Shown in pieces: positions 1-28,452 of a DNA stretch of 64,000 nt (within the stretch, counting starts at the first letter, position 1; each line of letters starts with the position of its first letter). The stretch is from the IMG/VR virus record IMGVR_UViG_3300042562_001598, positions 1-64,000 of that record. The stretch is one strand, 5' to 3'. The notes under the pieces were generated by a model, which saw only the letters and a program-made list of their open reading frames with translations, was not told the DNA's origin and did not search any database. The position numbers and the translations under genes are program-made.

Positions 1-190
1 GGGTTTGCGGTTTCCCTAATAAAAAATCGTGCGGAACTTATACTTCTGCGGTAACTTAGAATGAGGATGATGTCCGAATACGTCTTAGGATGGTGGTTAT
101 CAGCTTCCCCATATACAGCTGAATGGGCGGTTATTAACAGCCGATAAATATACGGTTAGGTATAAAAGGGGACTTCGGTCTCCTTTTTTA
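1..190 (+). ncRNA. Putative structured ncRNA, copy 1 (about 160 nt plus terminator; 5' end may lie outside the window); family not recognised
   Basis: Non-coding. Aligns without gaps to 199-388 with 24 differences in the first 160 nt, including compensatory pairs 32/48, 34/46, 104/118, 111/124 and 130/141. G-U-compatible changes favour the + strand. Confidence 0.75.
164..190 (+). terminator. Intrinsic terminator-like hairpin of copy 1
   Basis: aaaaggggac-TTCG-gtctcctttt: cUUCGg tetraloop followed by a T-run. Confidence 0.8.
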
Positions 191-198
191 GACATAAA

Positions 199-388
199 GG
201 GTTTACGGTTTCCTTAATAAAGAATCGGGTGAAACTTATAGTTTTACGGTAACTTAGAATGAGGATGATGTCCGAATACATCTTAGGATGGTGGTTACCA
301 GTTCTCCCGTATAAAACTTAACGGGCGTTTATTAACAAACGAGAAACATACGGTTAGGTAAAAAGAGAGACTTTGGTCTCTTTTTTTA
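199..388 (+). ncRNA. Putative structured ncRNA, copy 2
   Basis: Second copy at an offset of exactly 198 bp. All predicted stems are retained and it ends in its own hairpin plus U-tract. Confidence 0.75.
362..388. terminator. Probable bidirectional intrinsic terminator (copy 2 and the convergent 390..1031 gene)
   Basis: aaaagagagac-tttg-gtctcttttttt, immediately adjacent to the stop codon of the convergent ORF at 390. Confidence 0.8.
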
Positions 389-389
389 G

Positions 390-1031
390 TTATATAAGGT
401 CTTTAACTTTATAACTTCCTTTTAATTGTGGTGTATCAAAAAATGATACCCCTTTAATTTGTGTGATAAAATTAACTTTATATTTATTTTTATCAAATCT
501 ATATACCTCAACAATTTCTTGATAATTGTTTTTAGTTAATAATAAATTTCTACCTTGACCTAATCTCCAATCTTTAGCGTTTTTTATAAATTTTACGATT
601 GTACTTAAGTTATTAATAAATAAGTCAATACCTTCATAAGTGTCAGGGTTTAAGATTCTACTATTATGAAATTTACCTGGAAGTCCAGTCAATGGGTTTA
701 ATGGTGCGTAGTCAGGTTCTGAATTACGGAGTAATCTTTGTTTCCAGTGATTTGTTAGATTGATATCAAACATAATCTCACAACTTACTTGTCCATTTTT
801 ATTTGGTTGCATGTATTCGTCAGGACAAATCCATTTATTACCATTACTATTCCAATTATAAAATGAATTAACTTTTAAAGTTAATTCTGAATTTAATCTA
901 TTAGGAACATTAACGGTTGACTTACCCTCAATTAATAGTTGGTTAATAAAGTTTTCGTGAAGAACAACTTCTTGTATCGTCATTTCACTTTTAAGTGACT
1001 CCCGTAATATTTTTCTAATTAAATCTTTCAT
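390..1031 (-). CDS. Hypothetical protein with MKDLIRKILRE-type N-terminal leader
   Basis: 213-aa ORF with a TATTTAT motif just upstream (ATAAATA at 1039-1045 on +). No recognised catalytic motif. Confidence 0.7.
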   Translation of the reverse strand: MKDLIRKILRESLKSEMTIQEVVLHENFINQLLIEGKSTVNVPNRLNSELTLKVNSFYNWNSNGNKWICPDEYMQPNKNGQVSCEIMFDINLTNHWKQRLLRNSEPDYAPLNPLTGLPGKFHNSRILNPDTYEGIDLFINNLSTIVKFIKNAKDWRLGQGRNLLLTKNNYQEIVEVYRFDKNKYKVNFITQIKGVSFFDTPQLKGSYKVKDLI

Positions 1032-1155: not shown

Positions 1156-3867
1156 ATGATATCACAAGAAGACATTGAGAAGTTCCTACAAGGGAATGAC
1201 GACGAAAAATATATTGTATCGGTTGAATACGACTACACCACTGATGCTATCTACAAAGTTATTGAAGACCCCATTAAAGGTAAATTTATTAAAAAAGACA
1301 CATTCACCCCATTCTGTTGGGTTGGAGACCTTAGAGGTGTTAATTTTTACCAAGGGTCAAAAGACTTACAAAAAGCCGCAATGACCAAATACGGAATTAT
1401 GATTATCAAACTTGAAACAAGTGGTAACGAACGACTTGAGAACGGATTGAAATTTATGGTTAAAGCCATGAAAGGATACCGGGCGTTAGTCCAATTCTTC
1501 CGTGATGGAAACCTTGACCCTTGGGGTGAATCCGCAAAAGATAAATTATTAATCCTTCCCCCAGTTGAACAATACCTAATCTCAAAAGAAAAAAGGTTAT
1601 TCAAGGGGTTTGCAGAATACAATGATATTACCAGACTTGTTTATGACTTGGAGACCACATCTTTGGAACCAAAGGATGGAAGAATATTCATGATTGGAAT
1701 CAAAACAAATAAAGGTTACCAAAAGGTTATTGAATGTTCAAATATTGATGAAGAAAGAAAAGGACTTGTTGAGTTCTTTAATATCATTGATGAACTTAAA
1801 CCAAGTATCATCGGTGGATACAATTCAGCGAACTTTGACTGGTTTTGGATATTTGAAAGATGTAAAGCTCTTAACCTTGATATTAAAAAGATTAGTAAAT
1901 CACTTAACCCAAAAAAACCAATCGGGCAAAAAGATGGTATGTTAAAACTTGCCAATGAAGTTGAAAGGTTCAACCAAGTAACTCTTTGGGGGTATAATGT
2001 TATTGATATCATTCACTCCGTTAGACGAGCTCAAGCCATTAACTCCGGAATCAAATCCGCAGGTCTGAAATATATTACACAATACATCAAAGCAGAAGCT
2101 CCTGACCGAGTATATATTGACCACACAGAAATCGGGTCAATGTATGCCAAAAAAGAAGAGTATTGGTTAAACCTAACAAATGGTAAATATAAAAAAGCTG
2201 ATAACCCAACATTTGATAATTTAGATACCAGATTCCCCGGGACTTACACCAAAGTGACAGGTGATAATATCGTGGAAAGATATCTTGACGATGACTTAGA
2301 AGAAACCCTTCTTGTGGATGATGAATTCAATCAAGGGACTTTTCTACTCGCAACAATGGTTCCAACCACATACGAAAGAGTATCCACAATGGGTACCGCA
2401 ACACTATGGAAAACTATTATGCTCGCGTGGTCATACAAATACAATTTAGCCATACCACAGAAAGAAGAAAAACAAGACTTCGTGGGGGGATTGTCAAGAC
2501 TATTAAAAGTGGGTTACTCTAAAGATGTGTTAAAACTGGATTACTCATCCCTGTATCCTGCCATACAACTAGTTCATAATGTATTCCCTGAATGTGACGT
2601 AACTAACGCAATGAAAAGTATGTTGGGGTATTTCAGAAACTCCCGTATCACTTACAAAAATTTAGCAAAAGAGTTCTATGAAACAGATAAGAAAAAATCA
2701 TTAACATACGATAGAAAGCAGCTTCCTATTAAGGTGTTCATTAACTCCCTATTTGGAGCGTTATCAGCACCTCATGTATTTCCTTGGGGTGAGATGAAAA
2801 GTGGGGAACAGATTACCTGCACAGGTCGTCAATATCTCCGTCAGATGTTGAAGTTTTTTATGAACCGGGGGTATACTGCCCTAGTTTGCGACACAGATGG
2901 TATGAACTTTAGCCTTCCTGAGGAAGGTGTTGAAGATAGAAAATATATTGGAAAAGGTATTAATTGGTTAGTGAAAGAGGGCAAAGAATATACTGGTTAT
3001 AACGCGGATGTTGCGGAATTCAATGATGTCTTTATGAAATCTGTCATGGGTTTAGATTGCGACGGAACATGGGACTCTTGTATTAATTTGGCGAGAAAGA
3101 ACTATGCGACAATGGAAAGTGATGGGAAAATTAAACTTACCGGTAATACAATTAAGTCAAAAAAGTTACCTCTATATATTGAGGTGTTTTTAGATAAAGG
3201 TGTTAGATACTTACTTGAGGGTAAAGGACAAGAATTTATTGAATATTATTATGAATATATTCAGATTATCTTTGATATGAAAATACCGTTAAAACAAATT
3301 GCTCAAAGAGCTAAAGTTAAATTGAGTTTAGACGATTACAATAAACGAAGTACTCAAAGAACAAAAGGTGGTGCGTTTATGTCCAAAATGGCACATATGG
3401 AACTAGCTTTAAAACATAAATTAAAAGTATCGTTAGGTGATGTTATATCTTATGTTAATAACGGAACTAGAGCTTCACATGGTGATGTACAAAAGAAAGG
3501 TGATACAGTTCAGTTAAATTGTTATATGTTAGATGTCGCTGAACTTGAAAACAATCCTGATATGAGTGGGGAATATAATATTCCAAGAGCTATAGCGACT
3601 TTCAATAAAAGAATTCAACCATTGTTAGTTGTGTTCAAGGAAGAAGTTAGAAAAGGGTTACTCGTTACCGACCCTGAACAAAGAGGATTTTTCACTAAAG
3701 ACCAATGTCAAATGATTAATGGTATGCCTTTCAAGGAAAGTGACCAAGATACAATTGAGGATTTGTTAACATTGTCTGAAGGTGAAATTAAATATTGGGA
3801 TAAAGTTGGTATTGACCCTAACTACATCTACGAATTAGCGGAACCAGGATGGGAAGAATTTATGTAA
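1156..3867 (+). CDS. polB: Family B DNA polymerase with 3'-5' proofreading domain (T4 gp43-like)
   Basis: ExoI YDLETT, ExoII YNSANFD, motif A LDYSSLYP, motif B KVFINSLFG, motif C CDTDG. No intein-sized insertion. Confidence 0.95.
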   Translation: MISQEDIEKFLQGNDDEKYIVSVEYDYTTDAIYKVIEDPIKGKFIKKDTFTPFCWVGDLRGVNFYQGSKDLQKAAMTKYGIMIIKLETSGNERLENGLKFMVKAMKGYRALVQFFRDGNLDPWGESAKDKLLILPPVEQYLISKEKRLFKGFAEYNDITRLVYDLETTSLEPKDGRIFMIGIKTNKGYQKVIECSNIDEERKGLVEFFNIIDELKPSIIGGYNSANFDWFWIFERCKALNLDIKKISKSLNPKKPIGQKDGMLKLANEVERFNQVTLWGYNVIDIIHSVRRAQAINSGIKSAGLKYITQYIKAEAPDRVYIDHTEIGSMYAKKEEYWLNLTNGKYKKADNPTFDNLDTRFPGTYTKVTGDNIVERYLDDDLEETLLVDDEFNQGTFLLATMVPTTYERVSTMGTATLWKTIMLAWSYKYNLAIPQKEEKQDFVGGLSRLLKVGYSKDVLKLDYSSLYPAIQLVHNVFPECDVTNAMKSMLGYFRNSRITYKNLAKEFYETDKKKSLTYDRKQLPIKVFINSLFGALSAPHVFPWGEMKSGEQITCTGRQYLRQMLKFFMNRGYTALVCDTDGMNFSLPEEGVEDRKYIGKGINWLVKEGKEYTGYNADVAEFNDVFMKSVMGLDCDGTWDSCINLARKNYATMESDGKIKLTGNTIKSKKLPLYIEVFLDKGVRYLLEGKGQEFIEYYYEYIQIIFDMKIPLKQIAQRAKVKLSLDDYNKRSTQRTKGGAFMSKMAHMELALKHKLKVSLGDVISYVNNGTRASHGDVQKKGDTVQLNCYMLDVAELENNPDMSGEYNIPRAIATFNKRIQPLLVVFKEEVRKGLLVTDPEQRGFFTKDQCQMINGMPFKESDQDTIEDLLTLSEGEIKYWDKVGIDPNYIYELAEPGWEEFM

Positions 3868-3919: not shown

Positions 3920-4075
3920 ATGGGACGACCTAAAAAAGAGGAAAAAGATAAGAAAATTAAAGTTGGTATTTGTTTAGACAGAACTCTATATAACACTATG
4001 ATGGAAAATGGTGGAAAGGTCTCTCGTATAATAGAAAATATAATAAGAGAGTATTATGGAAACAAAGATTTGTAG
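3920..4075 (+). CDS. Small ribbon-helix-helix-like DNA-binding protein (51 aa; absent from the ORF track)
   Basis: Hand translation MGRPKKEEKDKKIKVGICLDRTLYNTMMENGGKVSRIIENIIREYYGNKDL. Shows an alternating beta-strand followed by two helices, overlaps the HNH start, and has a paralogue at 37818. Confidence 0.7.
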   Translation: MGRPKKEEKDKKIKVGICLDRTLYNTMMENGGKVSRIIENIIREYYGNKDL

Positions 4076-4775
4076 TAAGTGTAAAGAAGAAAAAAATGTG
4101 TGTGACTTTTATGTTGACCCTAACAATCAAAAATATCGGGCTTCGTGTAAAGTATGTTTCTATTTAACCCTTAAAAAACATAGGGATGGTAATAAAACTA
4201 AAATAAAAGAATATGCTAAAAATTATAGATTAGTTAACAAAGATGATATTAAAGAAAAAGGTAAAATTTATCGTGAAACAAACAAAGAAAGGGTGAAATT
4301 AAACCAAATAAAAAATTCTAAAACATATTATTTGAAAAATCGTGAAGTTATGATTGAAAAAAGTCGAAAATTTCGTGAGAATAATCCAAATTATTCTTTT
4401 GAATATAGAGAAAAAAATCCGAATTATAGTAATGATTATCAAAAAAATAGAAAAAAATATGATTTTATCTTTAAAATCTCACATAATATGAGAGTAAGAA
4501 TGTCAATTTTTCTGAAATCAAAAAATATTACGAAGAAAAATAAAACCTTTGAAATTATTGGTTGTTCACCTAAATTTCTTAAAGAACATATTGAGAAACA
4601 ATTTACTGAAGGTATGTCTTGGGATTTGATGGGTCAACATATTCACATTGACCATATTATACCTCTAGCGTCAGCAAATACTGAGGAAGAAATATATAAA
4701 TTGTGTCATTATACTAATTTACAACCACTGTGGGGTCCTGACAACCTAAGTAAAGGTGCGAAAATTATAACATAA
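4056..4775 (+). CDS. HNH homing-endonuclease-like protein with N-terminal CxxC...CxxC zinc finger
   Basis: CSKC...CKVC at the N-terminus; C-terminal HIDHIIPL...HYTNLQPLW...N HNH core. Confidence 0.85.
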   Translation: METKICSKCKEEKNVCDFYVDPNNQKYRASCKVCFYLTLKKHRDGNKTKIKEYAKNYRLVNKDDIKEKGKIYRETNKERVKLNQIKNSKTYYLKNREVMIEKSRKFRENNPNYSFEYREKNPNYSNDYQKNRKKYDFIFKISHNMRVRMSIFLKSKNITKKNKTFEIIGCSPKFLKEHIEKQFTEGMSWDLMGQHIHIDHIIPLASANTEEEIYKLCHYTNLQPLWGPDNLSKGAKIIT

Positions 4776-6358: not shown

Positions 6359-7489
6359 TTAATAAATATCGTTAAGTTCATAAATAATTTTTTCTCTTTG
6401 AGTAGGTTTAATTTTTATTGGTGTTAAGATTGGACTATTAGGTGTGTATTTATAAGCGAGAACATCACTACCTTGTTTAATTCTGTATCTTATAGCTAGT
6501 CTATGTTCACTAGAACCTCTTTGTCCTGCGTTAGACCAATACAATTCAATATCTTCAATATTAATAATTGTGTAGTTATCCAATATAATACCTGATAAAT
6601 TTTTCTTAATTTTTTCTAAAAAGTCTGTATGATTTTCATTAATCCAAACAAAAATATCGTCAATGATATGATTATAAAGGTTAATGTATTCGGGTTTTAA
6701 TTTACCTAATTCACCTTGTTTAAATATTGAGAAAAATTCTGATAAATAACTATCTGCTGCAAAGTTTATTTTTTTAACTTCAAATAGTTCTCCCTCATTA
6801 AATATTTTTCTACCATTCTCTAAAGTTAAATTTTTAATACTTTTTAAATCGGCTTTAATTGGAGGTGTTTCTAAAATAGAAGCTTCAATACATTTTTTAA
6901 TATTGGTAATTATTGATTCATAAGTTTCATCACCACTTTGTATTAATTTTATTAAATCAAAAAAACTTTCTTTAGTTTCTAAATCGCATTTATATTTTAA
7001 TTCTAATTTAGTTCTATAAGGTATAAAAACATCTCCAACAAAACTATCTTCGTATTCGGAATATTCTTTATTACGAACAGATTTTAGGATGTTTTCTAAA
7101 TCATCTTCATTAGTAGTGTCATCTAAATTTTTTAAATTCTGACGTGTTTTAGTATTATTAAATTTTGGGTCGTTGATAAAATCCGAAATAGTGTTTAGGT
7201 AAGATACGGTATTACTACTGTTTAAAGAAAGATTAATAATTTTAGGTAAGATACCTGATTTTTTCCAAGTAAAAAAATTAAATAAGTTTTCAACACTTTT
7301 ATTTAACGATGTTAATTCGTCACCTTTTATCTTTTTACTAAAATCATATAATTTACAATAAGGTGTATCTGTATTATTTTTAGTTTTTTTACATAATGAA
7401 TAAATATAGTTTAATGGTTCATCAGGGAATAGACTTCCCTGATTTGCTATTAATCTTTTATATTGTGATTGACTTATTAAAACTTTCAT
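6359..7489 (-). CDS. Hypothetical protein, possible PD-(D/E)xK nuclease fold
   Basis: 376 aa with MKVLISQSQ leader and a KADL...FEVKK motif. The nuclease call is tentative. Confidence 0.55.
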   Translation of the reverse strand: MKVLISQSQYKRLIANQGSLFPDEPLNYIYSLCKKTKNNTDTPYCKLYDFSKKIKGDELTSLNKSVENLFNFFTWKKSGILPKIINLSLNSSNTVSYLNTISDFINDPKFNNTKTRQNLKNLDDTTNEDDLENILKSVRNKEYSEYEDSFVGDVFIPYRTKLELKYKCDLETKESFFDLIKLIQSGDETYESIITNIKKCIEASILETPPIKADLKSIKNLTLENGRKIFNEGELFEVKKINFAADSYLSEFFSIFKQGELGKLKPEYINLYNHIIDDIFVWINENHTDFLEKIKKNLSGIILDNYTIINIEDIELYWSNAGQRGSSEHRLAIRYRIKQGSDVLAYKYTPNSPILTPIKIKPTQREKIIYELNDIY

Positions 7490-7501
7490 AATAAATAAAT
7501 A

Positions 7502-8380
7502 TTATGTAATATCAAATTTTCTATCCTTTTTATTAAATACATAATTACCATCAACAATTTTTGTGTTTTGGTTGTCAAATATTAATATATTTTTACCACC
7601 ATTACTAAATTTAGAAAAAATCATTAAATCTGTGTAATAAGGTTTAACATTAGCGGTATTATATATAGTAATGGTGTCATCTTCTTCATTATATTGACTT
7701 CTACCGAAAGGTTTTATTTGTGCGGTATACGTCTTAGGGTATATGGTTAATTCACAATCAACACCTTTAAGAGCGTCTTTATCATTACCTATTTCTGCTA
7801 CGCTTACAACATTTTCATCTTTAAATATTTGTTTTAACACTTTTATTGTGTCATCTTCTGTTTTAGCTCCAGTTCCGGTTGTTCTACTAGTTATTTTAAT
7901 TATTTTGTTAAAAGTTGACGAATTTGGGTTAAAAATTCTAGTTTTATATTCGTCAATAACATTAAGGAATTTTTTAGTTTGTTCAATTTGTTCTTTTGGT
8001 GTCACACCCAATATTTGTATTTCAGGTCTTGACTGACTTCTTAACACTTTATTAACATCATTTAATAAAACACAAAAACAACTATAATTTGTATTAATAA
8101 AATTAAGACCGGAACGACCTTTTTTCTCTAAATCATAAATACCGGATAATTGTCCAGGTCCATATTGATTTGCTTGATAATAGTTGTCCGGAAAAACTTC
8201 CATTAACATTCTATCAATTTCATTCGTAAACATTTTTTTAACTTGTGGGTTTGAGTTGAAAACAAAACGAAATTTTTCATCTAATTCTCTGCTACATTTT
8301 TCGGATGAATTATCACCGGCGGTTGAATTATATTTAATTTGTTCTGTAATATTTTGGGCTTTAGCTTCTATAATTTTCAT
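7502..8380 (-). CDS. Hypothetical protein, possible PD-(D/E)xK nuclease fold
   Basis: 292 aa with MKIIE leader and GAKTED...GVDCEL...TAQIKPF, an E...D...QxK arrangement. Confidence 0.55.
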   Translation of the reverse strand: MKIIEAKAQNITEQIKYNSTAGDNSSEKCSRELDEKFRFVFNSNPQVKKMFTNEIDRMLMEVFPDNYYQANQYGPGQLSGIYDLEKKGRSGLNFINTNYSCFCVLLNDVNKVLRSQSRPEIQILGVTPKEQIEQTKKFLNVIDEYKTRIFNPNSSTFNKIIKITSRTTGTGAKTEDDTIKVLKQIFKDENVVSVAEIGNDKDALKGVDCELTIYPKTYTAQIKPFGRSQYNEEDDTITIYNTANVKPYYTDLMIFSKFSNGGKNILIFDNQNTKIVDGNYVFNKKDRKFDIT

Positions 8381-13405: not shown

Positions 13406-16400
13406 ATGGCAACAAACAGTAAAGTATTTGTATCTCCTGGAGTATACACATCTGAAGTTGATTTAAGTTTCGTAGCTCAGAGTGTAGGTGTTACTACATT
13501 GGGTATTGTTGGTGAAACTCTAAAGGGACCAGCATTTGAACCTATCTTTATACGAAATTTTGACGAATTTTCAGCGTTTTTTGGAGGAACATCTCCAGAA
13601 AAATTCATCAACACCCAAATACCAAAGTACGAGGCGTCTTATATTGCAAAATCTTATTTGCAACAATCTAATCAATTATTTGTGACTAGAGTATTAGGTT
13701 TATCTGGGTATGATGCGGGTCCTTCTTGGACAATAACAACAGTTGCTAATGTTGACCCAACAACAATTCATTTTGAATGTTCGGGAAATACAACTGTAAA
13801 TTGTAATGTTGCTTGTACAGCTTACACTAAAACATTAATTTCTGTTAACTTTACAGGGTGTACCGGTAACATTGACAGTATTGGTTTCACATCAAATTTC
13901 CCATCTGAAATTTCTGGTAAGTTAAATTCAACTTATGAGTTGTTTAATGGTAGTACTTCAGTTATTAATACTAATTTAAAATCTCAAATTTTTGATATTA
14001 TTAATACTCCAAGTACTTCAGCAACATCTATATATTATTTTGGAGCAATTTCATCTGAAGATTATAATTCATCGTTAACATCTGGTTATACTTCACCTGT
14101 AAATGTTTTTGGTGTGGATAATGTTGATGGTGGGTTAATTAATTATTCCGCACCACAAAATGATACTTGGTATTATTCTTTATTTGATAATGTTGGTAAT
14201 ACGGTATATAGTGGTAGTTCATTCTATACTACTATTAGTAAATTTGTACAAACATCTCAATCATCAAATTGTGCATCATTCTTTAATTTTAGTATTTCAG
14301 GAACTGCTGGAAGTATCAATTACAATAATAATACTATTGATGTTGTATTACCTTATTCAGGTTTTTCAGGAACTTCATTATCGGCTTTAACACCTGTATT
14401 CAGTGCTTGTACTTCAGATGTGAAAGTTAGTGGTGTTACTCAAGTAAGTAATGTAACTACTAATAACTTCACTGGAACTTGTCTAACTTATGTTTTACGT
14501 TCATCGGATTCTGCGGTTACAACAAATTGGAATGTTTGTGTTACAGTTCAAGACCCTTGTGCTCCGGTAACACCAAATAATTCAGGTACTAATAATACAG
14601 GGACTATTCAAACTTGTTATTCAGGTACAGTTACAGGTTATACTTACACATTTGATGGAACATCTTACTCTGACTATGATGAGTTAGTTTTAGCGACATT
14701 ACGTTCTAGAGGTATTGCGACATATTCAACAGATAACGGACCGGTTTATGAGGTGTCAGGTTTAACTAAGGTATCTTTAAATGTTACTGGTGCTACTTAT
14801 TCTGGTGCAACTAAAAATCCTTTTAACACTTTTGGTATTAATGTGACTAATAAAGATGGTAATGTGTTTTTCTTTGAAACTTCATTCAGTAATGCTGACC
14901 CTAAATATATTAGTAAAGTATTTGGTACTACTAACTTCTCTAAACCAAGAACTACTGTTCCATTGTTTGTTGAAGAAGACTTTAAAACATTATTAAATTA
15001 TGGTTATAGAAAAGGATACATTAGAGGTATTAATAGTCAATTAACGGCTTTAAATAGTGCTAAATTAGACAATACTGGAACATCAATTGCTTGGTATTTA
15101 GAAAAGTATCAATCACCAACATCTCCTTGGTTAGTTTCAGAATTGAGAGGTAATAAAGTTTATGACTTATTCAAATTTACAACAATTGCTGATGGTGATG
15201 CTGCAAATACTGAAGTTAAAATATCTATTGCTAACATCTCATTTAATAACGGAACTTTTGATGTACTTGTAAGAGACTTCTTTGATACAGATAATAACCC
15301 TGTGGTTATTGAAAAATTCACTAATTGTAATATGAATCCTAATGATAACGCATTCGTTGCGAAAAAAATAGGTACTGTTGATGGTGAATATGAATTGAAT
15401 TCTAAATATGTTATGATTGAAATTAATGAGGACGCACCAATTGACGCACTTCCTTGTGGTTTCTTAGGTTATAACTATAGAGAATATGCTGGTGTTCGTT
15501 CACCTTTCCCAGTTGTTAAAAGTAAATACGATTATCCTGGTGAAGTAATTTATAACCCACCTTTCGGTATCTCTTCAGGTGATGATAACTCAACAAAAAG
15601 TGGTGGTGATAATGTTCGTAGAACTTATTTAGGACTTTCTGATACTATTGGTATTGATTCTAGTTTCTTTGGTTATAAAGGTAAACAATCACCTTTGAAT
15701 ATCGCTTGTGATACAACAGGTGACGATTGGTCTTTCAGAACAAAAGGATTCCACATGGATAAAAACGCGAGTGGTATTACAATTCCTAATACATTCTCAA
15801 CTAGTGGAACTCCAGCATTCTTTGTTGGTAGTGCAGATTTTACATCTGACCCAACTTCAGAATCTAATCCATATTACAGATTATACGCTCGTAAATTCTC
15901 ATTGTTAGTTCAAGGAGGTTTTGACGGATGGGATATCTATAGAGAATCAAGAACAAATTCAGATAGATTTGCTATTGGAAAAACTGGTTATTTAAATGGT
16001 GCAAGTGCTAGTTGTTCAACTAAATATCCTTCAGCTACAGGTTGGGGTGCATTTAAACAAATTACTGTTGGAGACAATAGTCAAGATTGGGCTAATACAG
16101 ATTATTACGCTTATTTATTAGGTCAAAGAACTTTCTCTAATCCTGAATCGGTAAATATTAATATATTTGTAACACCAGGTATTGATTATGTAAATAATTC
16201 TAATTTGGTTGAAGATGCGATTGAAATGATTGAGTTTAATAGAGCTGACTCATTGTATATTGCAACAACACCAGATTATAATATGTTTGTACCATCAGTA
16301 GGTGAATCAACTGATTTAATTTACCCACAAGAAGCGGTAGATAACTTAGACCAAACAGGTATTGACTCTAACTACACTGCAACTTACTATCCTTGGGTAT

Positions 16401-16987
16401 TAACTAGAGATAGTGTTAATAACACTCAAATCTATTTACCACCAACAGCGGAAGTAACAAGAAACTTAGCTTTAACTGATAACATCGCATTCCCTTGGTT
16501 TGCGGCAGCCGGTTATACAAGAGGTATTGTTAATGCTGTTAAAGCGAGAAAGAAACTTACTCAAGAAGATAGAGATACACTTTATAATGGTAGAATCAAC
16601 CCTATCGCAACCTTCTCTGACGTTGGAACTGTAATTTGGGGTAATAAAACATTACAAGTTAAACAATCAGCTCTTGACAGAATTAATGTTAGAAGATTAT
16701 TGTTACAAGCGAGAAAATTAATTTCTGCTGTGTCTGTAAGATTGTTATTTGAACAAAATGACCAAAAAGTAAGACAAGATTTCTTAGATGCGGTTAACCC
16801 TATTTTAGATGCTATCAGAAGAGATAGAGGTCTTTATGATTTCCGAGTATCGGTTTCTTCAGACGCTGCTGATTTAGATAGAAATCAAATGACAGGTAAG
16901 ATTTACATCAAACCAACTAAATCTTTAGAATTCATTGATATTACATTCTACATTACTCCAACTGGAGCGTCTTTTGAGAATATTTAA
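13406..16987 (+). CDS. Contractile tail sheath protein (gp18-like) with a large N-proximal insertion
   Basis: N-terminal VSPGVYTSEVD and C-terminal WFAAAGYTRG...INPI...WGNKT...DRINVRRLL...IKPTKSLEFI sheath motifs. Confidence 0.95.
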   Translation: MATNSKVFVSPGVYTSEVDLSFVAQSVGVTTLGIVGETLKGPAFEPIFIRNFDEFSAFFGGTSPEKFINTQIPKYEASYIAKSYLQQSNQLFVTRVLGLSGYDAGPSWTITTVANVDPTTIHFECSGNTTVNCNVACTAYTKTLISVNFTGCTGNIDSIGFTSNFPSEISGKLNSTYELFNGSTSVINTNLKSQIFDIINTPSTSATSIYYFGAISSEDYNSSLTSGYTSPVNVFGVDNVDGGLINYSAPQNDTWYYSLFDNVGNTVYSGSSFYTTISKFVQTSQSSNCASFFNFSISGTAGSINYNNNTIDVVLPYSGFSGTSLSALTPVFSACTSDVKVSGVTQVSNVTTNNFTGTCLTYVLRSSDSAVTTNWNVCVTVQDPCAPVTPNNSGTNNTGTIQTCYSGTVTGYTYTFDGTSYSDYDELVLATLRSRGIATYSTDNGPVYEVSGLTKVSLNVTGATYSGATKNPFNTFGINVTNKDGNVFFFETSFSNADPKYISKVFGTTNFSKPRTTVPLFVEEDFKTLLNYGYRKGYIRGINSQLTALNSAKLDNTGTSIAWYLEKYQSPTSPWLVSELRGNKVYDLFKFTTIADGDAANTEVKISIANISFNNGTFDVLVRDFFDTDNNPVVIEKFTNCNMNPNDNAFVAKKIGTVDGEYELNSKYVMIEINEDAPIDALPCGFLGYNYREYAGVRSPFPVVKSKYDYPGEVIYNPPFGISSGDDNSTKSGGDNVRRTYLGLSDTIGIDSSFFGYKGKQSPLNIACDTTGDDWSFRTKGFHMDKNASGITIPNTFSTSGTPAFFVGSADFTSDPTSESNPYYRLYARKFSLLVQGGFDGWDIYRESRTNSDRFAIGKTGYLNGASASCSTKYPSATGWGAFKQITVGDNSQDWANTDYYAYLLGQRTFSNPESVNINIFVTPGIDYVNNSNLVEDAIEMIEFNRADSLYIATTPDYNMFVPSVGESTDLIYPQEAVDNLDQTGIDSNYTATYYPWVLTRDSVNNTQIYLPPTAEVTRNLALTDNIAFPWFAAAGYTRGIVNAVKARKKLTQEDRDTLYNGRINPIATFSDVGTVIWGNKTLQVKQSALDRINVRRLLLQARKLISAVSVRLLFEQNDQKVRQDFLDAVNPILDAIRRDRGLYDFRVSVSSDAADLDRNQMTGKIYIKPTKSLEFIDITFYITPTGASFENI

Positions 16988-23146: not shown

Positions 23147-26100
23147 ATGTCAAATAGTTTCCTATCATTTACATCATCATCATCGTTTAGAAATAGTCTT
23201 ATGGCTAAAAACTTGGCACCGTATAATGTCCAAGGGGTTTATAGTCCACAAGTTAGTAATTTAACCTATGAAACGATTTTAGGTGATTCTCAAGTTATTG
23301 ATTCACCTAATAATTTGATAGCTGAAGACCCTTATGTTAAAATTTTATACCCATTAAATGAGTACGGACCAACTGGAGGTTATAACCCAAATATACTATT
23401 TAATGGTCCTTTATTACCTGTAACACCAAATCAAGGTCCTTATGCTCCTACACAGAGTGATGTTTTGACGGGTAATGATGTTTATTTAAATAAAGATAGG
23501 TTTTCACCATATATTAATAATATATTTACTCCGGATGGGGGGTATAGAAATATATTTGATGTTGTTACAAATTCATTTACATATCATTATGCGTCTTTAT
23601 ACGGTACTAACTTCGTTGCTTCTTCATATTCTCCGATATCAATATTATTATCAAATGACCCTACAGGTAGTAATGGTTTATTATCCCAAGATTCTTATAT
23701 TGCTAGAATTGGTGCTTTAAGGTTAAATGAGTTATTTAAAGATAGAATTAATAATGAAATTTTTAAAAACACAGTTGGTAGAGTTAACTTAAACGCGTTA
23801 CAAGACCCATTTGAGATAAGTTTATTATTAACTGGACAACAACCATTAATTTATAAAAATTGGAAAATTACAGTACCAGAAAACCCTATATTTTCGGTTG
23901 CGGATTTCGCAACTAGATTAGCTGGGGCTTATTGGCCTGTGTCATTAATTCCGGGTGATTATTTTGAGGATAATACTTTAAATGGTCAAACAAAACAAAC
24001 TTCAGCTGCGTTAAATGTTGTTAATCAATTAACAGGTGGCTTTTTAGGTCCTATATTAAATAAAAGGAGAAATCCTTCTGAAATATTTTTATCTAATACG
24101 GGTAACGGACAAAGGTCTGCTTTATTCGCTAATATTGATTATAATAAATACCAACCAAGTTATAACAAAACATTCGGTGGTTTATTGGGTATTGGACAAG
24201 CTCTTGTTAATTTGGCAATTAATTTAATTAACCCAAGTAACGGAACATTAGTTGGTGGTTATTATGTTGGTAGTAGAAATGCTGAACCATCGGTGATTAC
24301 TTCACCGGCTAATCAAGTACCTGTTGATTCATTTGGAAAACAATTACAAACACCTGTTTATGGTCCTTCAGAATTGGGTATTCTATATGAAGGTAATGAA
24401 GGTAAACTTAATTTTGGTTTAGGTGGTAAAAACAATACTGAAAACACTTCTGGTGGTTTGGTATGGACATCACCTAAATATAAATCAAATGCTGGATTTC
24501 ACGCAACACCTGGAGGTGGTTCAGGAAGTATGGATGGTGGGTTTAATGACATATCAGCAACTTACACTAGAGATGAATCAACTAATGTTGACTTTAAGGA
24601 AGGGTCAATTTTAGACCAAACTCAAAGACTTATTAATTCAGCTGACAATGTATCAGGTATTAATAGATTAAAACATGTTGGTAATGCGATGAATCAAGTT
24701 AGTAAAGTATTCCACGATGGGTATAAAGAAATTACTAAAGGTTCTAAAGTTGTGTCATATACTAAAAATACAACAGGTGAAGAAAAAGGTATTGAATATT
24801 GTAGAGTTTTTACTAAAGATAATCCATATTTGACATATAATGATTTACAAAAATCTGATGGTATTACTACAACTGGTAGACAATTTACTAATTCAGTTTT
24901 AGATAACACATATAATTTAAATATAGCTCCACTTAGAGGTGAGGGGTCAACTAATATACAAAAAAACTCGGAAAATAAATTGGTTGCTAAAAAATATATG
25001 TTTTCAATTGAGAATTTGGCGTGGAGAACATCTAGTAGACCTGGGTTTAGAGTTGAGGATTTACCAGTATGTGAACAAGGACCAAATGGTGGTCGGGTTA
25101 TGTGGTTTCCACCATATGGTTTAACATTCTCAGATAGTAGTACTGCAAATTGGAATTCTACATCATTTTTAGGTAGACCTGAGCCTATGTTTACCTATAA
25201 AGATACTAAACGAAGTGGTAGTTTAAGTTGGAAAATTATTGTTGATAGTCCTTCAGTTATGAATCTTATTGTTGAAGAACAATTAAAAGGTAAAAACAAA
25301 GAAAAAATTGATTCAATATTAGACTCTTTTTTTGCGGGTTGTGCGAAATATGATATATATGATTTAGCTCAAAAATTTAATCAAATCCCTATGAATCAAT
25401 TATATGATTTTCAGGAAGCTTTAAGTGACCCTAAAATTACTAAAGAACAATACGAGGCGATTTTTAAGGAAATTCCAACGGGTGGAGATGCTAATACTAA
25501 TCAAACACAGGCTAAAGACGCTACAATTACAAAATTGGAGGATGGTTATATTGGTGTGGGTTATTATTTTGATAATGACATACCTGACCCTAATTCAAGA
25601 GCAACAACATCATCAGTTAGTTTTGAGACTACCTATGCCGCATATACTAGTGCTAATAATATTGAAACATATCAAAAAACATCTGAAGGTGCTTTTAATA
25701 GTGGTCTGTCGTATTGTAAAACAAATCCTGGTTATTGTGAAAATCAAACAAAAGTAACTGAATTTTTTGATAATATTGTTAAAGATAACTATGAAAAATT
25801 GTCAAAAGAGTTTATAACTGACTTATTTAATGTTTTAAAAGAAAAAAAAGGTAAAGTAACTATTAATTTAATAGGTTCTGCATCTTCATCGGCAAATCCT
25901 GATTATAATATTAATTTGTCTAAAAGACGTATAGATTCGGTTACAAAATTTATGAAAGATGTTAAAGTTGGGGATGATTCTTTAACTCAATTTTTTGATG
26001 ACAAAACTTTAATTATTTCTGATAAGCCTATGGGTGAGGGTGCTGAAGTCAATGTAAAACCATTAGGTAAGAATGGTTCAGGTCAAGAAGTAGATTGTTC

Positions 26101-28123
26101 AAAAAATCAATTAAGTGGTTCTGGTAAAGTAAAAGATTCTATCGCTGATAAATTTTCAGTAACGGCGATGGCTTGTAGACGAGTTGTTATTAAATCTATA
26201 GTGGTTGTACCGACTGTAGTTACACCATTACCAACACCAATACCAAATGTTATTACCGACCCTGTTGTCGCGACAATTACACCACCAACTCCAGACCCGT
26301 TGAGTGCTAGAAAAAAAGGGATTAGTAAGAAAATTATAAGAACCTTATTGACAGAATGTAATTATTTTGATGTTATTAAAGATAAAGACCCGATGGTTTA
26401 TGATTCAATTAGGGAAAAAGTTAAATATTTTAACCCTGCGTTTCACTCTATGACACCTGAAGGTTTAAATAGTCGTTTAACATTTTTAAATCAATGTGTT
26501 AGACCTGGTGAAACCATACCGGTTATAGATTCCGATGGTAAACCAAAACATAATGACGCATTAAATACATCATTTGGTTCAGCACCGGTATTAATATTAA
26601 GAATTGGTGATTTTTTCAATACTAAAATAATACCAAACAATGTATCATTTACTTATGACCCATTAGTTTTAGATATGAACCCTGAAGGTATTGGAGTACA
26701 ACCTATGATTGCTAATGTTACTTTAACTTTTGATATTATTGGAGGAATGGGATTGGCAAAACCTGTAGAAGAGTTACAGAACGCTTTATCGTTTAATTAT
26801 TATGGTAATACTGAAATATATGATGAAAGAGCTACAGCGACTGAAGATGTGTCTAAATTAGATGCTAAATTCGCTGCGGAATTTTATGAAACTCCCCCAA
26901 CTCCAAAAATTGAAAATAAAATTACTAATGACGCCGGTAGTACTATTGGTACTATAATAACAACTATACCTGTTACTAACGGACAAACCGGTGAAATCTC
27001 GTATCTCACTATTATGGATAAATTATTGAATAGTTCTAAAGAATATTATACCAATATTCCAAATCAAATGGAATCAAGTATAAAGGCTTATAATTATGGT
27101 ATTTGGCAATTAGTTACTCAAGATAGAAATTATACTAAAGGTGTGTTAGGTGATGTTAATGGTAGTGATAAAATAAGTGATGTTCTTATTTATGGAAAAC
27201 CTAAAGAGGATGTTGAAACAAAAATAAATTCGTTATTTACCGAATTTATTAAAGATGTTGAAAAACCTAAAGATAGTAATAATAATTTCATTATCAAAAA
27301 TTTAGCAAAATATAAAGATTTAACAGAATCCGATATTAATAATGTAATTCTTAATTTCGTTAAATATATACAAGATTTTAAGAATGATTTTAGTCCTGGT
27401 ATCTTTAATATTACAAATACTATTGTGGAACAAGAACAAAATATGAATATTATTTTTAATAAACTTAATTTCATTACTAGTAAGTCAGATGGTAAAATAA
27501 TAGATAATCAAAATAGAATATATAATATCGCTGGAACAACTGAGGTAAGTCCTCAAAGTACAAATGTTGTTGATACATATGCTGAATTATGGGCTGATTA
27601 TAGTGAAGTTGGTAAAAAATTAATTGAGTTTAATTCTATAATGGTAGATAATAAAGTTATTACTGATAAATATACTGAACCGGGAGGTTTTACACCTGAA
27701 ACTAATGTGTTATCTTTAATTGAAGATAGACGAATGTTTATGGTCATGGCTAGAGTGTTTGAGGATAAAAATAAATTGAAGGACTTTCAAGATAAAATCA
27801 TTTCAGGCGAGGTGTTAAAAGTTAAAAAATTATCGTTTTTAAAACGAAAATTTAATAGTATATGTGATGACTTTAGAGATATTGTTAAGGACGAATTAAA
27901 GGCTGAAGAAAAGTTAATTGTTGGTGTAAAAAAACTTGATAGATATAAAAAATTCTTAGATAAATCAACTTATGTTAAAGGTAAAATGAGAAAGTTTACT
28001 TATACTACAGTTCCTGATGATACTAAAATTGCTTTACAGACGAAAATGTTAACAGAATTATACTCAACTAAAAATAGTAATGATGATAAAACAACCTTTA
28101 ATGGTAAGGTTCAATTTAATTAA
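23147..28123 (+). CDS. Large baseplate/tube-initiator-like protein containing an OmpA-like domain
   Basis: WNSTSFLGRPEPMFTYKDTKRSGSLSWKIIVD initiator-like motif; INLIGSAS...YNINLSKRRIDSV...MGE...CRRVVI OmpA C-terminal-like motif. Confidence 0.6.
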   Translation: MSNSFLSFTSSSSFRNSLMAKNLAPYNVQGVYSPQVSNLTYETILGDSQVIDSPNNLIAEDPYVKILYPLNEYGPTGGYNPNILFNGPLLPVTPNQGPYAPTQSDVLTGNDVYLNKDRFSPYINNIFTPDGGYRNIFDVVTNSFTYHYASLYGTNFVASSYSPISILLSNDPTGSNGLLSQDSYIARIGALRLNELFKDRINNEIFKNTVGRVNLNALQDPFEISLLLTGQQPLIYKNWKITVPENPIFSVADFATRLAGAYWPVSLIPGDYFEDNTLNGQTKQTSAALNVVNQLTGGFLGPILNKRRNPSEIFLSNTGNGQRSALFANIDYNKYQPSYNKTFGGLLGIGQALVNLAINLINPSNGTLVGGYYVGSRNAEPSVITSPANQVPVDSFGKQLQTPVYGPSELGILYEGNEGKLNFGLGGKNNTENTSGGLVWTSPKYKSNAGFHATPGGGSGSMDGGFNDISATYTRDESTNVDFKEGSILDQTQRLINSADNVSGINRLKHVGNAMNQVSKVFHDGYKEITKGSKVVSYTKNTTGEEKGIEYCRVFTKDNPYLTYNDLQKSDGITTTGRQFTNSVLDNTYNLNIAPLRGEGSTNIQKNSENKLVAKKYMFSIENLAWRTSSRPGFRVEDLPVCEQGPNGGRVMWFPPYGLTFSDSSTANWNSTSFLGRPEPMFTYKDTKRSGSLSWKIIVDSPSVMNLIVEEQLKGKNKEKIDSILDSFFAGCAKYDIYDLAQKFNQIPMNQLYDFQEALSDPKITKEQYEAIFKEIPTGGDANTNQTQAKDATITKLEDGYIGVGYYFDNDIPDPNSRATTSSVSFETTYAAYTSANNIETYQKTSEGAFNSGLSYCKTNPGYCENQTKVTEFFDNIVKDNYEKLSKEFITDLFNVLKEKKGKVTINLIGSASSSANPDYNINLSKRRIDSVTKFMKDVKVGDDSLTQFFDDKTLIISDKPMGEGAEVNVKPLGKNGSGQEVDCSKNQLSGSGKVKDSIADKFSVTAMACRRVVIKSIVVVPTVVTPLPTPIPNVITDPVVATITPPTPDPLSARKKGISKKIIRTLLTECNYFDVIKDKDPMVYDSIREKVKYFNPAFHSMTPEGLNSRLTFLNQCVRPGETIPVIDSDGKPKHNDALNTSFGSAPVLILRIGDFFNTKIIPNNVSFTYDPLVLDMNPEGIGVQPMIANVTLTFDIIGGMGLAKPVEELQNALSFNYYGNTEIYDERATATEDVSKLDAKFAAEFYETPPTPKIENKITNDAGSTIGTIITTIPVTNGQTGEISYLTIMDKLLNSSKEYYTNIPNQMESSIKAYNYGIWQLVTQDRNYTKGVLGDVNGSDKISDVLIYGKPKEDVETKINSLFTEFIKDVEKPKDSNNNFIIKNLAKYKDLTESDINNVILNFVKYIQDFKNDFSPGIFNITNTIVEQEQNMNIIFNKLNFITSKSDGKIIDNQNRIYNIAGTTEVSPQSTNVVDTYAELWADYSEVGKKLIEFNSIMVDNKVITDKYTEPGGFTPETNVLSLIEDRRMFMVMARVFEDKNKLKDFQDKIISGEVLKVKKLSFLKRKFNSICDDFRDIVKDELKAEEKLIVGVKKLDRYKKFLDKSTYVKGKMRKFTYTTVPDDTKIALQTKMLTELYSTKNSNDDKTTFNGKVQFN

Positions 28124-28125
28124 AC

Positions 28126-28452
28126 ATGGGTAAAAAACAATATTATAACAGATATAACGATTTTATTATTGACGGGAAACAAACTGTTTTTCCGTATGTG
28201 TCAATTCCAGGTAAAAGTTCGGATAAAAAGTATATTTATCGTGTTGGTCAGTCAAGATTAGATAAAATATCACAACAATATTATGGTTCACCATTTTTTG
28301 GGTGGTTAATATTACAAAGTAATCCTATTTACGGTGGTGAAGAATGGACTATTCCAGATGGGAGTGTTTTGACAGTTCCATTTCCTTTAGTTGCGTCAAT
28401 ACAAGATTACAATAATGAGTTAGATAATTATTTTTATTATTATGGTAGGTAG
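28126..28452 (+). CDS. LysM-like baseplate wedge protein (T4 gp53/P2 gpX-like)
   Basis: YRVGQSRLDKISQQYYGSPFFGWLILQSNP motif. Confidence 0.75.
   Translation: MGKKQYYNRYNDFIIDGKQTVFPYVSIPGKSSDKKYIYRVGQSRLDKISQQYYGSPFFGWLILQSNPIYGGEEWTIPDGSVLTVPFPLVASIQDYNNELDNYFYYYGR

What the first reader, a model, noticed from the sequence alone, without database searches (positions are those of the whole stretch)
1..388. Tandem pair of ~160-nt covarying structured RNAs of unrecognised family, each with its own terminator hairpin
Seen in sequence: two gap-free copies with a 198-bp period and 24 differences in 160 nt. Ten differences form five fully compensatory pairs (C32-G48 to T-A, G34-C46 to A-T, C104-G118 to T-A, A111-T124 to G-C, G130-C141 to T-A). 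Five more keep pairing through G-U (16, 24, 82, 100, 140) and one extends a stem (43). Predicted helices are 8-13/24-29, 31-37/43-49, 50-56/95-101 enclosing a hairpin near 64-86, and 128-132/139-143. An invariant core (49-81) and 3' tail TACGGTTAGGTA suggest a protein-binding or tertiary core. Inference: a phage-encoded, multi-copy functional RNA. I could not match it to tRNA, tmRNA, or the ribozymes and riboswitches I know. Speculative roles include a decoy for a host defence protein, a virion or packaging RNA, or a multimerising scaffold RNA.
Basis: partly seen in the sequence, partly recalled or inferred. Interest (0 to 1): 0.85.

Follow-up and report, generated by a model that had tools for sequence, protein, structure and literature searches.

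The report
New phage RNA paired with nuclease-like gene
The two repeats are real genes for a previously undescribed, strongly folded small RNA of uncultivated freshwater giant phages, and this RNA almost always sits tail-to-tail with one fast-evolving gene that may encode an RNA-cutting enzyme, which suggests that the two work as a pair.

Summary
Window 1-190 and 199-388 are two gap-free copies with 24 differences in 160 nt. Ten of these differences form five compensatory pairs, and each copy ends in a hairpin plus U-run. No Rfam family, tRNA or tmRNA matches.

I found about ten divergent subfamilies in related metagenomic phage contigs. All share a three-way junction (P2, P2a, P2b) followed by two overlapping helices (S1, S2). 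On 17 distinct sequences, 97.4% of cells pair and 14 of 23 pairs change on both sides. Slid controls give 24-49% pairing and at most 5 such pairs.

A Bacteroidota-type promoter (TTTG, 19-20 nt, TAnnTTTG) precedes 15 of 18 loci checked. G-U pairs place the RNA on the + strand.

New here: the RNA is linked to the convergent ORF 390-1031(-). Every locus fetched through the ORF had the RNA next to it, and every locus fetched through the RNA had the ORF, with one exception (L002). RNA type tracks ORF type.

The ORF family (91 clusters, no Pfam) gives a confident model whose best fold matches are RelE-type toxins and T4 RegB, but these matches are weak.

Best reading: the RNA is the dedicated partner of a putative endoribonuclease, antitoxin-like or regulatory. 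The function is inferred, not shown.

The parts
1..190 (+). RNA copy 1 (alpha type). The body is 1-163 and the intrinsic terminator is 164-190. The promoter lies off the window, which probably starts at the contig start.
   Evidence: The near-identical L001 shows TTTG-N19-TATCTTTG about 18 nt upstream of the first G.
199..388 (+). RNA copy 2 (beta type). The body is 199-361 and the terminator is 362-388. No promoter motif lies in the 8-nt spacer, so it is probably made by read-through or processing.
   Evidence: The terminator hairpin 366-381 also scores as a terminator on the - strand for the ORF.
50..101 (+). Conserved three-way junction. It comprises P2 50-56/95-101, junction strand 57-64 (N-A-R-A-A-N-G-A), P2a 65-67/73-75 flanked by G63-A64 and G76-A77, junction strand 76-80, P2b 81-84/89-92 and G93-U94. 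The same elements in copy 2 are at +198.
   Evidence: P2 has 5 of 7 pairs changed on both sides and P2a has 3 of 3. The P2b loop is GNRA in most subfamilies.
102..127 (+). Two overlapping helices, S1 102-105/117-120 and S2 108-112/123-127. The loops have fixed length: 2 nt, 4 nt (AUAY) and 0-2 nt. This is a compact pseudoknot or two mutually exclusive hairpins.
   Evidence: S2 has 4 of 5 pairs changed on both sides and is 100% paired. S1 was not part of the covariance model and is 97% paired, with 2 pairs changed on both sides.
1..49 (+). 5' domain. It holds hairpin 1-3/14-16 with a conserved U-rich loop (UUUGYGGYUUU), an A-rich linker whose 25-29 can pair with 153-157, and the variable hairpin 31-37/43-49.
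   Evidence: Hairpin 31-49 has two compensatory pairs. The loop motif recurs in L117 and L118. The long-range helix recurs as AAGUU/AACUU in L076 and AGUCAU/GUGACU in L117; I read this from the sequences and did not count it formally.
128..163 (+). 3' domain: hairpin 128-132/139-143 and tail 151-162 (UACGGUUAGGUA).
   Evidence: Pair 130-141 is compensatory, and 131-140 occurs as U-G, U-A and C-G.
390..1031 (-). Convergent partner ORF of 213 aa. It belongs to a new protein family and is a putative RelE/RegB-like endoribonuclease. Conserved residues are E35, H95, R102, P129, E133, K193 and G194.
   Evidence: (pLDDT 90.9).

Best explanation
Window 1-388 holds two tandem genes for a new family of structured small RNAs, about 165-190 nt long. 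The carriers are uncultivated freshwater jumbo phages. The promoter type suggests Bacteroidota hosts.

Shown:
- The RNA has its own conserved promoter and an intrinsic terminator.
- It lies on the + strand.
- It folds into a 5' hairpin, a three-way junction and two overlapping helices, all kept by compensatory changes.
- It is genetically coupled to the convergent gene 390-1031(-), which ends at the same bidirectional terminator.

Inferred: the RNA is the dedicated partner of that gene's product. The protein evolves fast and has weak RelE/RegB-like (mRNA endoribonuclease) features. The most likely mechanism is that the folded RNA binds the protein and holds its activity in check or tunes it, as an antitoxin RNA would. 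The early, strong, host-type promoter, and in some phages a second copy, would set the dose.
For: Structure:
- 97.4% of cells pair on 17 distinct sequences, and 14 of 23 pairs change on both sides. Slid controls give at most 5.
- Read on the - strand, pairing falls to 87.7%, because 38 cells are G-U.

Expression signals:
- TTTG-N19-20-TAnnTTTG lies upstream in 15 of 18 loci at a consistent distance.
- Each unit ends in a hairpin plus U-run.

Linkage:
- tblastn finds ORF homologues only in loci that also hold the RNA. None of the roughly 60 other PolB loci has either.
- ORF-first look-ups (P0002, P0004, P0005, P0006, P0009, P0014, P0021) all gave an RNA directly downstream in convergent orientation.
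- RNA-first pattern hits L162/L177, L124 and L160 all have the ORF.
- The module sits at different places relative to its neighbours in L068 and L076, and it is absent as a unit in L009.
- B-type RNAs go with B-type ORFs in two instances whose ORFs are only 44% identical.

Protein:
- The AF2 model has pLDDT 90.9.
- The top PDB matches are RelE, HigB and ParE toxins.
- BFVD matches a T4-type RegB 'site-specific RNA endonuclease' with prob 0.99 and E 0.02.
- The profile-profile alignment places H95-x3-R99-x2-R102 on the RegB invariant H48...R52...R56.
- RegB is known to share the RelE/YoeB fold, and an anti-RegB partner has been speculated (PMC3014915).
Against: - The fold matches are statistically weak. 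PDB E-values are 0.2-2, and hhalign gives probability 5.7% with E 0.0067 on one short motif. The nuclease assignment is therefore a lead, not a result.
- L002 carries a subfamily-A RNA with no ORF homologue nearby, so the RNA can exist without the protein.
- Within subfamily A the RNA is about 99% identical while the ORF drops to 46%. That is not what tight co-evolution of a binding pair predicts.
- No binding, cleavage or expression data exist.
- Linkage alone does not give the direction of the effect: inhibitor, cofactor or substrate.
Confidence: 0.4

Rival explanations
1. The RNA is a stand-alone, host-directed RNA. It would be a decoy or sponge for a host protein (defence effector, RNase, ribosomal or RNA-binding protein). 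On this view the neighbouring ORF merely travels with it in the same accessory 'moron' cassette.
For: - The RNA occurs without the ORF in L002, a different phage type with a gp55-like late sigma factor.
- RNA sequence is conserved while the ORF diverges to 46%.
- The strong host-type promoter suggests early, abundant expression.
- Copy number varies between 1 and 2.
Against: - Co-occurrence and the fixed convergent arrangement are near-perfect across about ten subfamilies.
- RNA type tracks ORF type.
- No host homologue or mimicked host RNA was identified. Resemblances to 16S segments hold only in subfamily A.
Confidence: 0.25
2. The RNA regulates the ORF through convergent transcription. Transcriptional interference, or pairing of the complementary 3' ends at the shared terminator, would control ORF expression, as in type I-like antisense control.
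For: - The RNA and the ORF converge on one bidirectional terminator.
- The arrangement is conserved in all subfamilies.
Against: - The overlap is limited to the terminator hairpin.
- An antisense role does not need a conserved three-way junction and overlapping helices kept by compensatory change.
- No notable complementarity to the ORF 5' region was seen, though the test was crude.
Confidence: 0.1
3. The RNA is a structural or packaging RNA of the virion or of a phage machine, like phi29 pRNA, or a multimerising scaffold.
For: - It has a three-way-junction architecture.
- The window probably starts at a contig end.
Against: - There is no match to the Rfam pRNA model.
- The gene is absent from most related phages that share 71-77% identical PolB within 10 kb. 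This is hard to reconcile with an essential structural role.
- It lies among replication genes, not packaging genes.
Confidence: 0.05
4. It is not an RNA gene. On this view it is a DNA-level repeat (origin, iteron or recombination site) or the 3' UTR of the ORF on the - strand.
For: It is a tandem direct repeat next to replication genes.
Against: - Compensatory changes keep the helices, and 38 G-U cells would become C-A on the other strand.
- Its own promoter and terminator are conserved.
- Most relatives have a single copy.
Confidence: 0.03

Closest known systems
Type III toxin-antitoxin systems (ToxIN, CptIN, TenpIN)
   Same: - A protein (putative) endoribonuclease is genetically coupled to a structured, sometimes tandemly repeated non-coding RNA.
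- The RNA has pseudoknot-like elements.
- A terminator lies between the two genes.
- Such systems also occur in phages (PMC3401426, PMC12283969).
   Different: - The RNA unit is about 190 nt, not about 34-45 nt, and is usually single-copy.
- The genes are convergent, each with its own promoter. In type III systems the RNA lies upstream of the toxin and is co-transcribed with it.
- The protein does not match ToxN/AbiQ, CptN or TenpN models. If anything, it looks RelE/RegB-like.
T4 RegB endoribonuclease and the RelE/YoeB toxin fold
   Same: - The partner ORF's model has RelE-type toxins as its best PDB matches and a RegB among its best viral matches.
- It shares an H-x3-R-x2-3-R motif with the RegB catalytic region.
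- RegB is an early phage gene (PMC3014915).
   Different: - No significant sequence or profile similarity was found, and Pfam PF10715 is not hit.
- The ORF is longer, at 213 aa against 153 aa.
- No RNA partner is known for RegB.
Small stable RNAs of large phages with unknown role (e.g. T4 species 1 and 2 RNAs; from my own knowledge)
   Same: They are discrete, structured small RNAs encoded by large myophages, and they are neither tRNA nor mRNA.
   Different: The T4 RNAs lie in the tRNA cluster and are processed from it. No sequence or structure relation was tested or seen here.
Hammerhead ribozyme three-way junction
   Same: - It has three helices around a junction.
- An N-G-A sequence runs into the second helix, and G-A-A follows it.
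   Different: - The catalytic core (C3, U4, G5 of CUGANGA; A14) is not present. Subfamily C has GAU instead of GAA.
- No Rfam hammerhead model matches.

Membership tests
Any Rfam 15 family (4227 models, incl. 6S, 6S-Flavo, pRNA, tmRNA, riboswitches, ribozymes, HEARO, Y RNA) | Covariance-model score at or above the family's gathering threshold | tested here: not met
   There are no hits in the window at gathering threshold. At E<=10 on 1-1200 only terminator-driven noise appears, such as sraA and RsaOG at 18-21 bits against thresholds of 50-56. Six divergent relatives also gave nothing.
tRNA / tmRNA | Cloverleaf or tRNA-like domain with a tag reading frame | tested here: not met
   ARAGORN finds 0 genes in the 64-kb window.
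Type III toxin-antitoxin | Toxin of the ToxN/AbiQ, CptN or TenpN families | tested here: not met
   There is no Pfam, PHROG or PADLOC match for the ORF or its relatives.
Type III toxin-antitoxin | Antitoxin is a tandem array of short repeats directly upstream of the toxin and co-transcribed with it, with a terminator between them | tested here: not met
   Here the units are 198 bp and number 1 or 2. The RNA is convergent with the ORF and has its own promoter.
Type III toxin-antitoxin | The RNA binds and inhibits the toxin, and the toxin processes the repeat RNA | not testable with these tools
   This needs biochemistry. Only genetic linkage is shown.
RegB / RelE-YoeB endoribonuclease superfamily (for ORF 390-1031) | RelE-like fold of two helices plus an antiparallel sheet, with catalytic His/Arg residues | tested here: inconclusive
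   - The model has pLDDT 90.9.
- RelE, HigB and ParE rank first in the PDB, but with E 0.5-2.
- BFVD gives RegB with prob 0.99 and E 0.02.
- hhalign against the RegB family gives prob 5.7% and E 0.0067, over the H-x3-R motif only.
phi29-type packaging RNA | Match to the pRNA model, and a gene at the genome end next to the packaging genes of a protein-primed podophage | tested here: not met
   There is no Rfam hit. The host genome is a jumbo myophage with a tail sheath, and the RNA lies among replication genes.
Hammerhead ribozyme | Conserved core CUGANGA ... GAAA around three helices | tested here: not met
   The junction strands are N-A-R-A-A-N-G-A and G-A-W-U-A. Essential C3, U4 and G5 are absent, and there is no Rfam hit.

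The most novel reading that the evidence does not exclude
A new class of RNA-protein module in phages. A RelE/RegB-fold endoribonuclease would be neutralised or steered by a dedicated ~170-nt structured RNA (three-way junction plus pseudoknot) that is transcribed convergently from its own promoter. This would amount to a new type of RNA-antitoxin system, or the long-sought kind of 'anti-RegB' partner. The phage might use it for host shut-off or for conflict with other phages or host defences.
Probability: 0.3. Interest if true: 0.8.

Novelty: new variant of a known kind. Interest (0 to 1): 0.68.

Why it matters
Few structured RNAs of phages have a known role, and jumbo phages of environmental Bacteroidota are almost unexplored.

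This work yields three things. First, a well-defined new RNA family with strong covariation. Second, a new protein family of 91 clusters with a confident model. Third, a clear genetic rule that ties the two together.

If the protein is a RelE/RegB-type nuclease controlled by the RNA, that would extend RNA-antitoxin logic to a different toxin fold and a different gene architecture. It would also give a testable example of how a phage controls its own mRNA-cutting enzyme.

Even if the function differs, the RNA is a good target for structure probing and RNP work.

Tried and rejected
- **Known phages.** blastn and megablast of the RNA and of the first 6 kb against INPHARED gave no match. tblastn of PolB gave only 21-25% identical Salinibacter and cyanophage polymerases. 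No cultured relative or host is known.
- **nhmmer.** A search from the two copies found only subfamily A, plus weak hits to B and C.
- **Collection scans.** The strict core pattern in JGI metagenomes and in 185,579 species genomes gave only the same phage subfamilies plus chance hits in coding DNA. Examples are L098, L101 and L105-L108, which the covariance model rejects. No bacterial homologue was seen at that stringency.
- **Promoter motif in the window.** The motif is not enriched in the 64-kb window itself. It is specific to the RNA genes, not a general signal there.
- **Terminator scan.** The simple scan did not flag the + strand terminators. I read them from the sequence.
- **rRNA mimicry.** Mimicry of the 16S 530 loop or of the h22-h23 junction was considered from memory. 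The matching letters occur only in subfamily A and are not conserved, so I dropped the idea.
- **Other motifs.** Kink-turn and hammerhead readings of the G-A/G-A motif do not fit the junction.
- **Antisense pairing.** The RNA-ORF 5' region duplex test was uninformative.
- **Protein atlas.** Only unnamed viral clusters were returned, plus a faint DUF4258 lead.

Full report
**1. Observation**

Window 1-190 and 199-388 are two direct copies with a 198-bp period. Over the first 160 nt there are 24 differences and no gaps.

A sixth lies in the terminator stem. In that count 98.8% of cells pair and 6 pairs change on both sides. Sliding the 3' partners gives 0-1 such pairs.

Each copy ends in a GC-rich hairpin with a UUCG or UUUG loop followed by 6-7 U. 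Core G+C is 0.43-0.48, against about 0.30 for the genome.

**2. What carries it**

- The window is a low-GC myophage. It has a family-B DNA polymerase (1156-3867), an SNF2 helicase and an 1193-aa tail sheath.
- The same core 23-mer occurs at the same offsets at the start of a 282-kb IMG/VR contig. The window therefore probably starts at a contig end of a jumbo phage.
- There is no nucleotide match among 50,697 deposited phages. The closest deposited polymerases are only 21-25% identical.

**3. Known families**

Rfam 15 gives nothing at gathering thresholds for the whole window. At E<=10 for 1-1200 it gives only terminator-driven noise. Six divergent relatives also gave nothing. ARAGORN finds no tRNA or tmRNA.

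**4. Relatives and structure**

I fetched 80 loci around PolB relatives and scanned for core patterns in three collections. I built covariance model R1 and made look-ups that started from the neighbouring protein.

Together these gave about ten subfamilies:
- A: window, L001, L006, L003, L002, L109, L110, L113
- B: L068, L092, L095, L160
- C: L076, L104, L097
- D: L111, truncated by a contig end
- single representatives: L117, L118, L119, L124, L162

Outside the core these subfamilies are barely alignable, yet they share one architecture:
- a 5' hairpin with a U-rich loop (UUUGYGGYUUU);
- an A-rich linker;
- a variable hairpin;
- a three-way junction. It consists of P2, junction strand N-A-R-A-A-N-G-A, a short hairpin P2a flanked by G-A and G-A (replaced by U-A and A-U pairs in L118), junction strand G-A-W-U-A, hairpin P2b (usually with a GNRA loop) and G-U;
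- two overlapping helices, S1 and S2, with fixed loop lengths of 2 nt, 4 nt (AUAY) and 0-2 nt;
- one or two 3' hairpins;
- a terminator.

On 17 distinct sequences, 97.4% of 390 cells pair and 14 of 23 pairs change on both sides (62 cells). Slid controls give 24-49% pairing and at most 5 pairs and 8 cells. That alignment was fitted to the nested helices of R1. S1 was not in the model, and it still pairs in 97% of cells, with two pairs changed on both sides.

With L3 of only 0-2 nt, full-length S1 and S2 may be sterically hard to form together. This is my inference from pseudoknot geometry. A compact pseudoknot of 4+4 bp, or two alternative hairpins, are both open.

**5. Strand and expression signals**

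Thirty-eight cells are G-U pairs. Read on the opposite strand, pairing falls from 97.4% to 87.7%.

In 15 of 18 loci a TTTG-N19-20-TAnnTTTG motif lies upstream at a consistent distance. From my own knowledge of Bacteroides and Flavobacterium promoters, this is the -33/-7 consensus of the primary sigma factor of Bacteroidota. It suggests that host phylum and early transcription by the host polymerase.

The motif is not enriched elsewhere in the window. In tandems only the first copy has it. Copy 2 of the window is therefore probably made by read-through or processing.

**6. The partner gene**

ORF 390-1031(-) stops 2 nt from the terminator of copy 2. That terminator also scores as a - strand terminator.

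- tblastn shows that ORF homologues occur only in loci that hold the RNA. The roughly 60 other PolB loci have neither.
- Starting from the protein, seven independent look-ups of homologues down to about 30% identity all found the RNA immediately downstream in convergent orientation.
- Starting from the RNA pattern, the new hits L162/L177, L124 and L160 all carry the ORF.
- The module is absent as a unit in L009. It sits on different sides of a neighbouring gene in L068 and L076.
- B-type RNAs go with B-type ORFs, which share only the N-terminal ~27 residues with the main family. This holds in two phages whose ORFs are 44% identical.
- The one exception is L002. It is a different phage type, with a gp55-like late sigma factor and a head-closure protein, and it has a subfamily-A RNA but no ORF homologue.
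- Within subfamily A the ORF is hypervariable (46-100% identity), while the RNA and PolB stay 94-99% identical.

**7. What the protein may be**

It has no Pfam, PHROG or PADLOC match. A profile search finds 91 clusters. Nearly invariant residues are E35, H95, R102, P129, E133, K193 and G194.

With that alignment AlphaFold2 gives pLDDT 90.9. The best PDB matches for both models are RelE, HigB and ParE toxins, but with E 0.2-2. Against viral models, a T4-type RegB 'site-specific RNA endonuclease' scores prob 0.99, E 0.02 and TM 0.46.

Profile-profile comparison with a RegB family alignment gives E 0.0067 and probability 5.7%. It puts H95-x3-R99-x2-R102 on RegB H48, R52 and R56.

RegB is known to share the RelE/YoeB fold. 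His48 is reported as a catalytic residue, and an anti-RegB partner has been speculated (PMC3014915). I treat the nuclease assignment as a lead with roughly even odds.

**8. Interpretation**

Shown:
- a new structured RNA family with its own promoter and terminator;
- strong covariation;
- near-obligate linkage to a new protein family.

Inferred: the RNA is that protein's partner. It most plausibly binds the protein and restrains or tunes a RelE/RegB-like RNase, which would be type III TA-like logic with a different fold and a different architecture.

Rivals:
- a host-directed decoy that merely travels with the ORF (favoured by L002 and by the conservation mismatch);
- an antisense or convergent-transcription regulator;
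- a packaging or scaffold RNA;
- a DNA-level repeat or - strand UTR (disfavoured by the G-U pairs and the promoter).

**9. Novelty**

No described RNA family matches. The closest known kind is the RNA-antitoxin/endoribonuclease pair of type III systems (PMC3401426), but two defining features were tested and not met. I therefore rate this a new variant of a known kind. There is a fair chance that it is a distinct class.

Noticed in passing
window 1-388; L110:3640-4225(-); L109:1695-2060(-): Subfamily A has two paralogue types: alpha (window copy 1) and beta (window copy 2). Their order is alpha-beta in the window, L001 and L006, but beta-alpha in L110. The single copy in L109 looks like an alpha 5' half joined to a beta 3' half, which suggests recombination between copies.
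   Followed up: partly
window 390-1031(-); L003/L007 2187-2831: The partner ORF is hypervariable. It is 46.5% identical between phages whose PolB is 94-95% identical and whose RNA copy is about 99% identical. This pattern is typical of genes in an arms race or of cassette exchange.
   Followed up: partly
L068:9300-9330; L160 (RNA on - strand, about 7400-7650): B-type RNAs keep a 12-nt loop (AAUCCUAAAACC) between the S2 and S1 strands unchanged, while the flanking stems change. They also lack the 5' domain of the other subfamilies.
   Followed up: no
L001:4650-5420: Two tandem paralogous small ORFs lie upstream of the RNA. There is also a duplicated block that holds the promoter motif (ATATCTTTGACTTGTTGAAATGA occurs twice).
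   Followed up: no
L002:4700-9100: A subfamily-A RNA, about 88% identical to window copy 1, sits in a different phage background. That background has a gp55-like late sigma factor (PHROG 234) and a TnsA-like/head-closure protein, and G+C is visibly higher. This implies transfer of the RNA gene between unrelated phages.
   Followed up: partly
window 23147-28123, 28442-34819, 47428-52584, 13406-16987: The window holds very large ORFs of 1658, 2125 and 1718 aa, and an unusually long tail sheath of 1193 aa whose sheath domains occupy only the last ~290 residues. None of these was analysed.
   Followed up: no
window 4056-4775(+); L068:7637-8176(-): Endonuclease VII/HNH-like genes lie near the polymerase in the window, and an HNH-like ORF lies near the module in L068. 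These may be homing endonucleases that contribute to the mosaic layout of this region.
   Followed up: no
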